From NCBI RefSeq assembly GCF_001194135.2, contig NC_068993.1, positions 13,067,427 through 13,131,258 of the forward strand: 63,832 bases of DNA. Direction: 5' to 3'. Shown here piece after piece: positions 38,624 to 41,695 of the stretch (position 1 is its first letter; each line of letters begins with the position of its first letter). A program made the position numbers and the translations under genes. Source of the stretch: Octopus bimaculoides (Eukaryota). The notes beneath the pieces were generated by a model. It did no database searches and was not told the origin of the DNA. It saw only the letters and a list, made by a program, of their open reading frames with translations.

Positions 38624-39089
38624 ACATACACACTCTCCAGTACATTCACACGCATATATATATATATATACATATATATATGTGTGTGTGTGTGTGTACA
38701 CGTATGGTATGTATATATAAATCTGTGTATGTCTGTGATTGCATATATGCACACAGACACTATGTCTCCTGCTCTCTCTCTCCCTCTCTCTTTCTCTCTC
38801 CTACTCTTTTTCTTTGCTATTTAGTGGTCTACAAATAACTATTTTACAGTTTTTAGCTTTGTTCTTCTACTTCCAAATTTTAAACTCATCAGAGAGCAAC
38901 ATTTTCTCTTATAATATTCTCATAAAACGATACAATAAACAATAGTTATATATTGTTGGAAAGTAGCCATTTCAATCACCTGTACAGTTTTCACTTACAA
39001 ATATGAATCTTGTGTTAATTAAAAGATATACATAAATATCTATTGCTATGTTAATGTTCGTATTTTCTCTTCTTTTTTAGGTAAGTACA

Positions 39090-39135
39090 ATGGAAAATAT
39101 TTGCAACATTTTATTTGTTATGCTGCTTCTAACAG
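39090..39135 (+). CDS. First coding exon of a secreted or membrane protein: signal peptide MENICNILFVMLLLT(G/x); exon 39081-39135
   Basis: Strong acceptor (ttttctcttcttttttag), Kozak-like acaATGG, hydrophobic h-region ILFVMLLLT, and phase-1 donor CAG|GTAAGG at 39136, a typical signal-peptide exon. Confidence 0.6.
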
Positions 39136-41695
39136 GTAAGGTGTTTTACGACATCTCAGTCTTAGAACTAGACCACCTCAAAAGTTCCTGGTGTTGTTTC
39201 TTTAGTTATTTATCATTTATCAATGCCTTAATACCAACAAACATCTACGACCCCTCTGGTAAGGGTTTTTAATTGTCTGTCAGGTAAAACGTAGACGGTG
39301 CTTTGATATTCTCTAATTGTCTGACTATTTCCTTTATACACCTTTGGTACCTGAAAGCTAATCCTTTTATGAATCTTAACCCTTTTTAATACTAACCCAT
39401 TTGCGACCAATCGGTTCTAATTTAATTTTCTTGTGTACATCAAGGTTTTGCGCTGAAACCTAGCTAGTGAAGTTTCACCTGATTTGAATTAGCGAGGCAA
39501 TTATACATTTCTTTGCCTCATACGCAATACCATACAGAGAATTTCAGCTTTATAAAATTCCCTGCATGTCCGTGTTTGTTTTTTTTTTTTTTTTCCGGCC
39601 TATTATCAACGTTATGAACAGAACTAATCTGAGAGTAACTGCAGAGGCCCTATAGTTGCAAATGAAGATAGAAGCAAGTAAATGTATTAACACCAGAGTG
39701 TCTTGTTTCTTTTGCTAAATCCTAAATCCATTCATGTTCAGATCCATCGTAAAAGGGTTTTTAACCCGAAATACCAGAACTAGTTAAATATTTCTGTCAT
39801 AATTTGATCATTATTATTGTTACATTTAATATTTAATACTTTATCTTCATTGCCTTTGTCTTCTATATCACACTCATTTTATGTGTGTGTGTGTGAGTGT
39901 GTGTGTGTGTGTGTGTGTTTGTTCGTTTGTTTGTGCGTGTCTGAGCGTCGTATATAGGTCCTATGACATTGTACAAGTACATTTATCCTGAGAACCTCGA
40001 GAGCACCCCGACACTAAAAGCAACTGATAACGTTTGCACGGGAAGTGGAATTGACGAGACGGCAAAAACAATTTGTCTACATATCACCCTACCCGTTTAC
40101 TACCGTCATCGTTGTCGGCAGCATTGGTGTTTTTGCTATGGTTGTTGCTGTTTTTGCTATGGTTGTTGCTGTTTTATTCTGCTGAAGTTAACGGGAAACT
40201 AGTCCAGTAGTAACAAAAAAAAAAAGAGAAAGAAAAAAAAACATAGGTAAAAATAAACAGTACGAAACAACTGCAAAAACAAAAATATAAAAAAAGGCCA
40301 CTTGTCAGTAACACCACCTTCCGTTTGCAAGAGTAAAGAATCATTAATGCTTGACAGGGAGCCATTTTGTATGTTGTTGCTGTTGTTGATATTGCATTTG
40401 TTTTTGTTTTTATTGCTGCGTTCGAGAGATGTTTACGTTGTGGTAGTTGCGTATCTCTATATGTATGCGTAGATGTATGCTTGCTTGTGAGTACATGCAT
40501 GTATGTATGTATATGTGTGCCTGTATGCATATATGTAGGCTCACGTGCGTGTGAAGCGGGCTGGCGTGTGTTGGTGTTGCTGAAATTGTTAAAACAGCCT
40601 GATGGGAAAAACAGAAGTTTTTTGACAGGGAGTTCGGGCGAGAAAAAGCTTACTAAGGTACGCCGGATTCGGCTCGTGTCAGGCTTGGATTAATTTCTTC
40701 CGTTTCGAAAGAGTGGCTTTGCATGTGATCACGAGTTAGACATAGTGCTGAATTGCCTGTTTTGGGAAGAACGATAACTCATGGGAATTAAACAGACACA
40801 AAAAAAAGAAGAGGAAGAAGAAAAATACAAAGAAATAAGACAAACAAAGAATTGGGCAAGTTATACTTTATGATTTGCCAGAAATAGAAACCATGTGTCC
40901 CTCAAATTACAAATAGCAAAAGAGACCGATAAAATAAATTCCAGACTTTAAAAATGAAGTCCTGGGATAGATGCTCTAACATGGCCGTAGTGATTGTAAC
41001 AAATGAAAGAATAGGTAGATAGATAGAGAAACAGAGAGATAGGTAGACAGACAGACAGATAGAATTTTGTTATCACTAAATGGAAGAGACGGATGTAAAC
41101 ATTTTGTTGCTACGTAAAACATCGTTGAGGCTAGAAAAAGAGTTATCAACCAGCCGGAAGTTTAAATCTTCTGATATGTTTCCAGGAATGACAGCATAGC
41201 TTCTTTATCAGCCCACAGAGACATAGCTTATAAATCAATTATTATCGAGGTCTTAAATAATACGGAATGACCGATGTACCGGTTTTAACACTATGTTAAT
41301 TATCGAATTCAATTAATAAGTTACTTTCGCATGAATAAGGGTTTGTTTTAGTGCTATACTGTACTACAGAAATTTGTACCGCTGACTCCTCCTTTCTTCT
41401 AGCTACGAATATTTACATAGCGTCAATATGTTTACATCTATCAATTATATACTGCAGGAACGGATCAGTGATTTATTGATATAACATATATGTATGGATA
41501 AATTATATTCAATTATAATACTTGCTACGTTTATATATAATTCATGTATCTATTTGTATATGGAGGTATGTGCGCATGCACATTTTATAGTAGCAATAAG
41601 CTCTACCCTACTCAGCGAAATCATTTCCAAATCTAGCTGGTAAATGTTATGTGACTCGGGAACATGCAACGGAGGACTTCTCTAATACTTTAAAC

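What the first reader, a model, noticed from the sequence alone, without database searches (positions are those of the whole stretch)
39061..39141. Recursive-splice-site-like AG|GTAAGT gating a start-codon/signal-peptide exon
Seen: a long pyrimidine tract ends in AG (39079-80) and is followed immediately by the perfect donor GTAAGT. Nine nt into the exon, a Kozak ATG opens MENICNILFVMLLLT, ending at a second donor CAG|GTAAGG. Known: AG|GT 'ratchet' sites in Drosophila and RS-exons in vertebrate long introns work this way; after splicing to the acceptor, the regenerated donor competes with the downstream donor, so the exon is skipped or kept. Inference: here that competition would switch the start codon and signal peptide on or off (secreted vs non-secreted or no product). 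The upstream exon end (..AGG from 29952) would set the strength of the regenerated donor. I do not know of such a switch described in a cephalopod.
Basis: partly seen in the sequence, partly recalled or inferred. Interest (0 to 1): 0.72.

Follow-up and report, generated by a model that had tools for sequence, protein, structure and literature searches.

The report
Likely recursive splice site with 55-nt exon
A strong splice acceptor sits directly against a perfect splice donor, followed 55 bases later by a second strong donor, which is the known anatomy of a recursive splice site; no evidence shows that its small start-codon reading frame makes a protein.

Summary
There are 16 pyrimidines at 39063-78, then AG|GTAAGT at 39079-86. 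A Kozak ATG lies at 39090 and opens MENICNILFVMLLLT. A second donor, CAG|GTAAGG, lies at 39133-41.

It is far beyond chance. The acceptor-donor motif occurs once, against 0 of 100 shuffles, and I expect about 0.001-0.004 per window. With the second donor the expectation falls to about 1e-5 per window. It is the best juxtaposed acceptor/donor in the window by 8.6 bits, and the only strong exon-like unit on the + strand.

The anatomy matches the ratchet point plus short RS-exon described in Drosophila and vertebrates. A promoter-like cluster and a donor at 29952 lie 9.1 kb upstream. No exon is recognisable in the 24.7 kb downstream.

Neither open frame of the 55-nt unit shares even three 5-residue words with any of 5.8 billion protein cluster representatives. 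No ORF in the window has a relative or a Pfam domain.

Best reading (0.5): an intronic ratchet point whose RS-exon is mostly skipped. Only RNA data or orthologous loci can decide.

The parts
29777..29861 (.). Promoter-like cluster of three ACAGGAAGT (ETS-type GGAA core) sites. Two of them lie in a direct repeat TTAACAGGAAGT spaced 34 nt apart.
   Evidence: All three occurrences in the 64-kb window fall within 82 bp. The direct repeat is reported. The promoter function is inferred.
29861..29869 (+). TATA-like TATATATAT, 27-35 nt upstream of an Inr-like TCACTTC (A at 29896).
   Evidence: Read from the sequence. Weak evidence, because TA-rich runs are common in this window.
29896..29952 (+). Putative short non-coding first exon. 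Its 5' end is inferred. It contains no ATG and ends in AGG|GTAAGT.
   Evidence: Donor PWM score 10.2, seventh best on the + strand. Alternatively 29784-29952 could be an internal exon, because an acceptor scoring 13.0 lies at 29784. No RNA evidence.
29953..39080 (+). First intron segment, 9,128 nt, from the putative donor to the ratchet point.
   Evidence: Its length falls in the 9-15 kb segment range reported for fly recursive introns. It contains assembly gaps and SINE copies. Inferred.
39051..39055 (+). Candidate branch point TTAAT (yUnAy), with the branch A at 39054, 26 nt upstream of the AG.
   Evidence: Read from the sequence. Inferred from the consensus only.
39063..39078 (+). Polypyrimidine tract of 16 consecutive pyrimidines.
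   Evidence: The acceptor PWM score is 14.5, third best of all AG sites on the + strand.
39079..39086 (+). Ratchet point: AG|GTAAGT, a 3' splice site abutting a consensus 5' splice site.
   Evidence: If spliced to ...ATAGG (29952), it recreates exactly the -5..+6 sequence of that exon's own donor.
39081..39135 (+). RS-exon of 55 nt, not a multiple of three.
   Evidence: It is the only unit on the + strand with acceptor >= 9, donor >= 8.5 and an open frame in the whole window. Its size matches cryptic RS-exons (about 50 nt) and Ubx m1/m2 (51 nt).
39090..39134 (+). ATG-initiated frame MENICNILFVMLLLT in Kozak context ACAATGG, continuing in phase 1 with G at 39135.
   Evidence: Mean hydrophobicity 2.62, matched or exceeded by 2.7% of open ATG frames in the window. 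No protein relative.
39133..39141 (+). Downstream (RS-exon) 5' splice site CAG|GTAAGG.
   Evidence: PWM score 11.5, second best donor on the + strand.
39105..39145 (+). Predicted 16-bp hairpin whose 3' arm (39130-39145) contains the downstream donor.
   Evidence: Free energy -12.9 kcal/mol, z = -2.99 against its own shuffles. However, about 5% of random 51-mers of this window fold as well. Suggestive only.
39136..63832 (+). Remaining intron (or non-coding DNA). At least 24.7 kb with no recognisable exon before the window ends.
   Evidence: No protein relative and no Pfam domain for any + strand ORF of 30 aa or more. No convincing phase-1 acceptor/ORF. No second ratchet-like site.

Best explanation
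The site is a recursive splice site (ratchet point) with its short RS-exon. It lies in the long first intron (at least 34 kb) of an unannotated transcription unit on the + strand, which probably starts at the promoter-like cluster near 29.8-29.9 kb.

The mechanism follows the published model.
1. The 55-nt unit 39081-39135 is recognised by exon definition, through its strong acceptor and its downstream donor.
2. It is spliced to the upstream exon (...ATAGG, 29952), which removes the first 9.1 kb.
3. The junction recreates AGG|GTAAGT, identical to the upstream exon's original donor.
4. That regenerated donor is then used for the next splicing step, so the 55 nt leave with the rest of the intron.

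On this reading the unit is mostly skipped. The ATG frame is not the gene's normal start. If the unit were included, it would place a strong upstream AUG and 55 extra nt in the 5' region, which is a reason to keep it out.

Shown: the sequence anatomy, its statistical exceptionality, and the absence of protein support. Inferred: transcription of the + strand, the identity of the upstream exon, actual use of the sites, and the skipped fate.
For: - The motif Y16-AG|GTAAGT is exact. It is unique in the window and absent from 100 shuffles. About 0.001-0.004 are expected per window.
- A second strong donor lies 55 nt downstream (p = 0.0067; composite 0 of 100 shuffles).
- The combined acceptor+donor score is 22.6 against a next best of 14.0 among 267 AG|GT sites.
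- It is the only strong exon-like unit on the + strand.
- The anatomy equals the published definition: a tandem acceptor|donor, a cryptic RS-exon of about 50 nt flanked by a downstream donor, generally out of frame, in long introns.
- Most fly recursive sites have a 5' splice site less than 100 nt downstream.
- Fly recursive segments are typically 9-15 kb and enriched in first introns. Here the first segment is 9.1 kb, after a putative first exon.
- 55 nt is not a multiple of three.
- Neither open frame shares three 5-mers with any of 5.8 billion protein cluster representatives.
- No ORF in the window has a relative or a Pfam domain.
- A predicted hairpin holds the downstream donor. If real, it would favour the regenerated donor.
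Against: - No RNA evidence of any kind could be obtained, and no orthologous sequence could be fetched. Use of the sites and their conservation are therefore untested.
- The host gene is not identified, and no downstream exon lies in the window.
- The ATG in Kozak context, opening a hydrophobic frame that runs to the donor, is unlikely by chance in such a unit: 0.001 with window segments and 0.0002 with a local model.
- With the upstream exon ending in AGG, my rough PWM scores the regenerated donor at 10.2, below the downstream donor at 11.5. In flies, cryptic RS-exons usually have the stronger ratchet donor, although exceptions such as hth exist.
- The hairpin is not exceptional against the genomic background.
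- No paper in the held library links recursive splicing to molluscs, so its prevalence in this clade is unknown.
- The PWMs are human-like frequencies from my memory. They are not trained on this organism.
Confidence: 0.5

Rival explanations
1. The 55-nt unit is an expressed, alternatively included RS-exon that carries the gene's start codon and the first 15 residues of a signal peptide. Competition between the regenerated donor AGG|GTAAGT and the downstream CAG|GTAAGG decides the outcome. It may be tuned by the exon junction complex or by the hairpin. Inclusion would give a secreted product. Skipping would give another start or no product.
For: - The frame starts at a Kozak ATG (A at -3, G at +4), is hydrophobic, and is open to the donor. 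The joint p is about 0.001-0.0002 under null models.
- With a start site near 29896 there is no earlier ATG, so this would be the first AUG.
- The downstream donor scores at least as high as the regenerated one, which in the competition model favours inclusion.
- Expressed RS-exons exist: Ubx m1/m2, msi, and hundreds of annotated human RS-exons.
Against: - No protein in 5.8 billion cluster representatives shares three 5-mers with the peptide.
- No downstream coding exon is detectable in 24.7 kb.
- The one Cys-rich, phase-compatible ORF (57856-58104) runs into a SINE copy. Its only database hits are artefacts of tandem-repeat proteins.
- The n-region MEN carries no positive charge.
- T-rich DNA gives hydrophobic frames readily. 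The feature was noticed after the fact.
Confidence: 0.2
2. An ordinary, constitutively included exon that merely happens to begin with GTAAGT. It could be a non-coding 5'UTR or lncRNA exon, or an unannotated first coding exon. The regenerated donor would be silent, for example blocked by the exon junction complex as in mammals, so no recursion or switch operates.
For: - Strong acceptor and donor, and a plausible upstream first exon.
- Hundreds of constitutive human exons recreate a 5' splice site and are kept in by the exon junction complex.
- The absence from protein databases fits a non-coding exon.
Against: - A perfect GTAAGT at an exon start has a probability of about 1-3e-4. That makes this reading much less likely than a site under selection for it.
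- The window shows no other exon-like unit or coding content.
- A non-coding exon does not explain the ATG/Kozak/hydrophobic frame any better than the ratchet reading does.
Confidence: 0.15
3. A chance constellation in untranscribed or antisense DNA, in which none of the sites is used.
For: - No gene, transcript, protein or RNA family could be tied to the window.
- In a genome of a few Gb, tens to a hundred or so bare Y-tract-AG|GTAAGT motifs are expected by chance. This is extrapolated.
- The first stage presumably screened many windows.
Against: - The full composite (acceptor, consensus donor, second strong donor within 115 nt) is expected about 1e-5 times per window, or about one per genome.
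- It is an 8.6-bit outlier in the window.
- A promoter-like cluster with a same-strand strong donor lies at a typical recursive-segment distance upstream.
Confidence: 0.15

Closest known systems
Drosophila intronic ratchet points with cryptic RS-exons (Burnette 2005; Duff 2015; Joseph 2018/2021; Pai 2018)
   Same: - A pyrimidine tract and AG fused to GTAAGT.
- A short unit (about 50 nt, here 55) closed by a second donor less than 100 nt downstream.
- A length that is not a multiple of three, and no coding support.
- A position about 9 kb into what appears to be a long first intron.

   Different: - The host gene, long-intron context, conservation and RNA intermediates are all unverified here.
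- By a rough PWM the downstream donor is not weaker than the regenerated one.
- The unit holds a well-placed ATG with a hydrophobic frame.
- The organism would be outside insects and vertebrates.
Expressed RS-exons: Ubx microexons m1/m2 (51 nt), msi, heph and others in Drosophila
   Same: A short exon starting with a functional donor. Inclusion or skipping is decided after the first splicing step, by the choice between the regenerated donor and the exon's own donor.
   Different: - Those exons are in-frame coding cassettes that are deeply conserved, including wobble positions.
- Here the unit would carry the start codon and is 55 nt.
- Neither expression nor conservation is known.
Vertebrate RS-exons: cryptic ones in long genes (Sibley 2015) and annotated ones held in by the exon junction complex (Blazquez 2018)
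   Same: Definition of an RS-exon, reconstitution of an RS 5' splice site at the exon-exon junction, and competition with the downstream 5' splice site.
   Different: Dependence on the exon junction complex cannot be tested here. Annotated RS-exons are by definition present in mRNA and protein sets, and this unit is absent from the protein collection searched.

Membership tests
Recursive splice site / ratchet point with cryptic RS-exon | [quoted passage not shown] | tested here: met
   Y16-AG|GTAAGT at 39063-39086. It has the best combined score of the 267 AG|GT sites, by 8.6 bits.
Recursive splice site / ratchet point with cryptic RS-exon | A further 5' splice site less than about 100 nt downstream, defining a short RS-exon | tested here: met
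   CAG|GTAAGG lies 55 nt downstream, and it is the second-best donor on the + strand.
Recursive splice site / ratchet point with cryptic RS-exon | Located inside a long intron of a gene transcribed on the same strand | tested here: inconclusive
   A putative promoter and donor lie 9.1 kb upstream, and no exon is found in the 24.7 kb downstream. However, no gene or transcript could be identified.
Recursive splice site / ratchet point with cryptic RS-exon | Regenerated (ratchet) donor stronger than the RS-exon donor | tested here: inconclusive
   Rough human-like PWM: 10.2 (with AGG upstream) against 11.5. It would be 12.5-12.7 after an exon ending in CAG or AAG. A hairpin may mask the downstream donor. 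Fly exceptions are known.
Recursive splice site / ratchet point with cryptic RS-exon | RS-exon content non-coding or out of frame | tested here: met
   55 nt is not a multiple of three. Neither open frame is found in any protein. Caveat: the unit contains a Kozak ATG with a hydrophobic frame.
Recursive splice site / ratchet point with cryptic RS-exon | Strong evolutionary conservation of the acceptor|donor motif and of the downstream donor | not testable with these tools
   No related animal genome is reachable. The exact-pattern scan of metagenome contigs found nothing.
Recursive splice site / ratchet point with cryptic RS-exon | RNA intermediates: ratchet-junction reads, sawtooth intronic coverage, and lariats with their 5' end at the site | not testable with these tools
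   No candidate among 5.8 billion protein cluster representatives shares three 5-mers with either frame. The mRNA level is not testable, and an unannotated gene is not excluded.
   AGG|GTAAGT scores 10.2, identical over -5..+6 to the donor at 29952. This depends on that exon being the true partner.
N-terminal secretory signal peptide | A positively charged n-region, a hydrophobic h-region of 7-15 residues, and a c-region with a cleavage site | tested here: inconclusive
   The h-region is present (ICNILFVMLLLT, mean Kyte-Doolittle 2.62, top 2.7% of open ATG frames). The n-region MEN has net charge -1. The c-region would lie in an unidentified next exon. No signal-peptide predictor was available.

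The most novel reading that the evidence does not exclude
The 55-nt RS-exon is the sole carrier of the gene's start codon and signal-peptide core. After the first splicing step, the choice between the regenerated donor and the exon's own donor would toggle the transcript. That choice might be modulated by the exon junction complex or by the hairpin over the downstream donor. One outcome encodes a secreted protein and the other uses a different start, or none. This would be recursive splicing used as a translation-start and secretion switch, and the first recursive splicing documented in a mollusc.
Probability: 0.15. Interest if true: 0.7.

Novelty: new member of a known kind. Interest (0 to 1): 0.45.

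Why it matters
Recursive splicing has been shown experimentally in flies and vertebrates. The held literature has no paper linking it to cephalopods or other molluscs. Animals with very long introns are where it should matter most.

A confirmed site would extend the mechanism to a third major animal lineage. It would also give a concrete, testable locus, with a defined upstream donor, ratchet point, RS-exon and competing donor.

If the RS-exon is in fact included and translated, it would be an example of donor competition gating a start codon. I found no description of that. As it stands, this is a strong sequence-level prediction of a known kind of element, not a demonstrated new mechanism.

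Tried and rejected
1. I looked for the gene by concatenating ORF translations and searching the 5.8-billion-protein collection.
- + strand ORFs of 30 aa or more downstream of the site: no hits.
- Splice-site-filtered candidate exons plus the longest ORFs of both strands elsewhere: no hits.
- Both frames of the 55-nt unit: no candidate at all.

2. Pfam on concatenated ORFs found nothing.

3. An Rfam scan and a tRNA scan found nothing.

4. An exact-pattern scan of metagenome contigs for the site found nothing, as expected. No cephalopod or other animal genome collection is reachable, so conservation could not be tested.

5. I tested a downstream Cys-rich ORF (57840-58118) as a possible mature-peptide exon. 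Its 3' part is a SINE. The two exhaustive-search hits are tandem-repeat proteins in which weak per-repeat matches add up, not homologues. Rejected.

6. I looked for a phase-1-compatible next exon. The only tidy candidate is the acceptor at 51580, which gives 37 codons and then a stop. It has no support, so I did not adopt it.

7. CpG-island mapping to find promoters only picked up SINE copies. Strand compositional skews were uninformative.

8. The hairpin over the downstream donor is significant against its own shuffles. It is unexceptional against the window background, so I kept it only as a note.

9. A full Markov simulation timed out. I replaced it with an analytic estimate.
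Full report
**Observation**

- Sixteen consecutive pyrimidines lie at 39063-39078.
- AG follows at 39079-80 and the consensus donor hexamer GTAAGT at 39081-86.
- Nine nt into the unit, an ATG at 39090 lies in the context ACAATGG. It opens MENICNILFVMLLLT.
- That frame runs open into a second donor, CAG|GTAAGG (39133-35|39136-41).
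- The unit is 55 nt and ends in phase 1.
- A second frame, (G)KYNGKYLQHFICYAASN, is also open. The third frame begins with a stop.

**Is it more than chance?**

Yes, clearly.
- The motif Y10-N-Y-AG|GTAAGT occurs once in the window and in none of 100 dinucleotide-preserving shuffles.
- The window has only 11 acceptor-like Y10NYAG sites on both strands. The probability of GTAAGT after such an AG is 1-3e-4 under Markov orders 1-4. This gives 0.001-0.004 expected sites per window.
- A second strong donor (AGGTRAG) starting 14-114 nt downstream has probability 0.0067. The composite was seen in 0 of 100 shuffles. Its expectation is therefore about 1e-5 per window. If the genome is a few Gb, that is roughly one per genome. 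The genome size is my extrapolation.
- Of the four AGGTAAGT sites in the window, only this one has a pyrimidine tract.
- I scored sites with simple position weight matrices. These use human-like frequencies from my memory and are not trained on this organism. The acceptor scores 14.5, third best on the + strand. The downstream donor scores 11.5, second best.
- 39081-39135 is the only + strand segment in the whole window that combines a strong acceptor, a strong donor and an open frame.
- Among all 267 AG|GT junctions, its combined acceptor+donor score is 22.6. The runner-up scores 14.0 and is its own downstream donor.
- The region is single-copy within the window.

**Surroundings**

I found no protein-coding content anywhere in the window.
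- Concatenated + strand ORFs of 30 aa or more from 39.0 to 63.8 kb gave no hit in the 5.8-billion-protein collection.
- The same was true of splice-site-filtered candidate exons plus the longest ORFs of both strands elsewhere.
- Pfam found nothing.
- Rfam and a tRNA scan found nothing.
- The window is AT-rich, full of microsatellites, SINE-like copies and 15 assembly gaps.

A query made of both open frames of the 55-nt unit returned no candidate that shares three 5-residue words. A protein beginning MENICNILFVMLLLT would share eleven. So no protein cluster representative in that collection contains the unit in either frame. I could not verify that the source species' proteome is in the collection. 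An unannotated gene therefore remains possible.

**Upstream**

All three ACAGGAAGT (ETS-type) sites of the window lie within 82 bp, at 29780-29861. Two of them sit in a direct repeat. After them come, in order:
- a TATA-like run at 29861-69;
- an Inr-like TCACTTC with its A at 29896;
- a stretch without any ATG;
- the donor AGG|GTAAGT after 29952, with PWM score 10.2.

This looks like a promoter with a short non-coding first exon on the + strand, but it is inferred. An acceptor at 29784 would allow an internal exon 29784-29952 instead.

From 29952 to the site is 9,128 nt. Downstream, no exon is recognisable before the window ends 24.7 kb later, and there is no second ratchet-like site.

**What it is**

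The literature defines this anatomy precisely.
- A ratchet point is a tandem acceptor|donor in a long intron. It encloses a short cryptic RS-exon of about 50 nt, flanked by a downstream donor. The motif is ultraconserved. The exon content is poorly conserved and usually out of frame (Joseph et al. 2021).
- Most fly recursive sites have a further 5' splice site less than 100 nt downstream (Blazquez et al. 2018).
- Recursive sites cut long fly introns into pieces of about 9-15 kb and are enriched in first introns (Pai et al. 2018).
- The RS-exon is first defined and spliced to the preceding exon. The regenerated donor then competes with the exon's own donor, giving skipping or inclusion.

The unit here meets every sequence-level criterion. 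If its partner is the exon ending at 29952, the junction recreates ATAGG|GTAAGT, which is the same nine-plus bases as that exon's original donor.

**Which fate?**

This is where the evidence runs out.

For a mostly skipped, cryptic RS-exon:
- There is no protein support.
- The length is not a multiple of three.
- No coding exons lie nearby.
- It sits at a typical recursive-segment distance in an apparent first intron.
- A predicted 16-bp hairpin (39105-39145, -12.9 kcal/mol, z = -3.0) buries the downstream donor. About 5% of random 51-mers in this repeat-rich window fold as well, so this point is weak.

For an expressed start-codon exon:
- An ATG that is open to the donor, in Kozak context, with this hydrophobicity arises in only 0.1% of mock units built from window segments. 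It arises in 0.02% under a local composition model.
- It would be the first AUG of a transcript starting near 29896.
- My rough PWM puts the downstream donor (11.5) above the regenerated one (10.2).

Those p-values describe a feature noticed after the fact. In flies, donor strengths also do not fully predict the outcome.

I weighed these points with rough priors. The ones that mattered most were these:
- the chance that an ordinary exon starts with GTAAGT is about 1-3e-4;
- the peptide is absent from the protein collection;
- no downstream exon was found.

| Reading | Weight |
|---|---|
| Ratchet point with a mostly skipped RS-exon | about 0.5 |
| An ordinary exon with a silent regenerated donor | about 0.15 |
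| Chance or unused sites | about 0.15 |

**Leads that failed**

- A Cys-rich ORF at 57856-58104 is compatible with the phase-1 donor. It runs into a SINE copy. Its only hits in the exhaustive search are tandem-repeat proteins in which weak repeats sum.
- The best phase-compatible acceptor, at 51580, gives 37 codons and then a stop. It has no support.
- A metagenome scan for the site found nothing.

**Comparison and novelty**

The principle is known from three sets of examples:
- Ubx m1/m2 and other expressed RS-exons in flies;
- cryptic RS-exons in long fly and vertebrate introns;
- hundreds of annotated human RS-exons kept in by the exon junction complex.

No paper in the held library connects recursive splicing with cephalopods or molluscs. 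I found none describing an RS-exon that gates a start codon.

I therefore file this as a probable new member of a known kind. It is a strong, testable sequence prediction, not a demonstrated mechanism. RNA-seq junction, sawtooth and lariat evidence, orthologous loci and a minigene would settle it. I could not confirm the organism with these tools.

Noticed in passing
window 29777-29952: All three ACAGGAAGT (ETS-like) sites of the window cluster within 82 bp, two of them in a 34-nt-spaced direct repeat TTAACAGGAAGT. A TATA-like run, an Inr-like motif and a strong + strand donor (AGG|GTAAGT after 29952) follow. This looks like a promoter with a short non-coding first exon. An ATG at 29847 would open a 34-codon upstream ORF ending at 29951 if transcription started further upstream.
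   Followed up: partly
window 39105-39145: A predicted 16-bp hairpin (-12.9 kcal/mol, z = -2.99 against its own shuffles) has the downstream donor CAG|GUAAGG entirely within its 3' arm. It is the only one of 193 GTRAG sites with all nine donor bases paired at that stability. However, about 5% of random 51-mers of the window fold as well.
   Followed up: partly
window 57856-58104 (+): An open frame with six cysteines (CSLTRCKFNCDGMCDDETCDHMLWEQATLC) is compatible with the phase-1 donor at 39135. Its 3' third is a SINE copy, and its only database matches are artefacts from tandem-repeat proteins.
   Followed up: yes
window 49232-49239 (+): A second AG|GTAAGT lies on the + strand, 10.1 kb downstream of the RS-exon, and is the top-scoring donor on that strand (11.7). 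It has no pyrimidine tract, so it is not a ratchet point. Whether it ends an unrecognised exon is unknown.
   Followed up: no
window, e.g. 12157-12556, 23310-23752, 26203-26600, 32821-33215, 58067-58161: A SINE-like repeat family has up to ten copies on both strands. Several copies carry a GTG|GTAAGTAGC donor-like motif, which accounts for some of the high-scoring donors in the window.
   Followed up: no
whole window: There is no detectable protein-coding content, Pfam domain, Rfam family or tRNA on either strand in 64 kb. There are 15 assembly gaps totalling 3,449 N, the nearest to the site at 38330-38460. The window is deep intron or intergenic DNA.
   Followed up: yes
window 42618-42685 (-): This is the only exon-like unit on the - strand with a fairly strong acceptor (10.0) and donor (9.1) and an open frame (IVSTSKNYLSNVSSFHFLKHCK). 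It has no database relative.
   Followed up: partly
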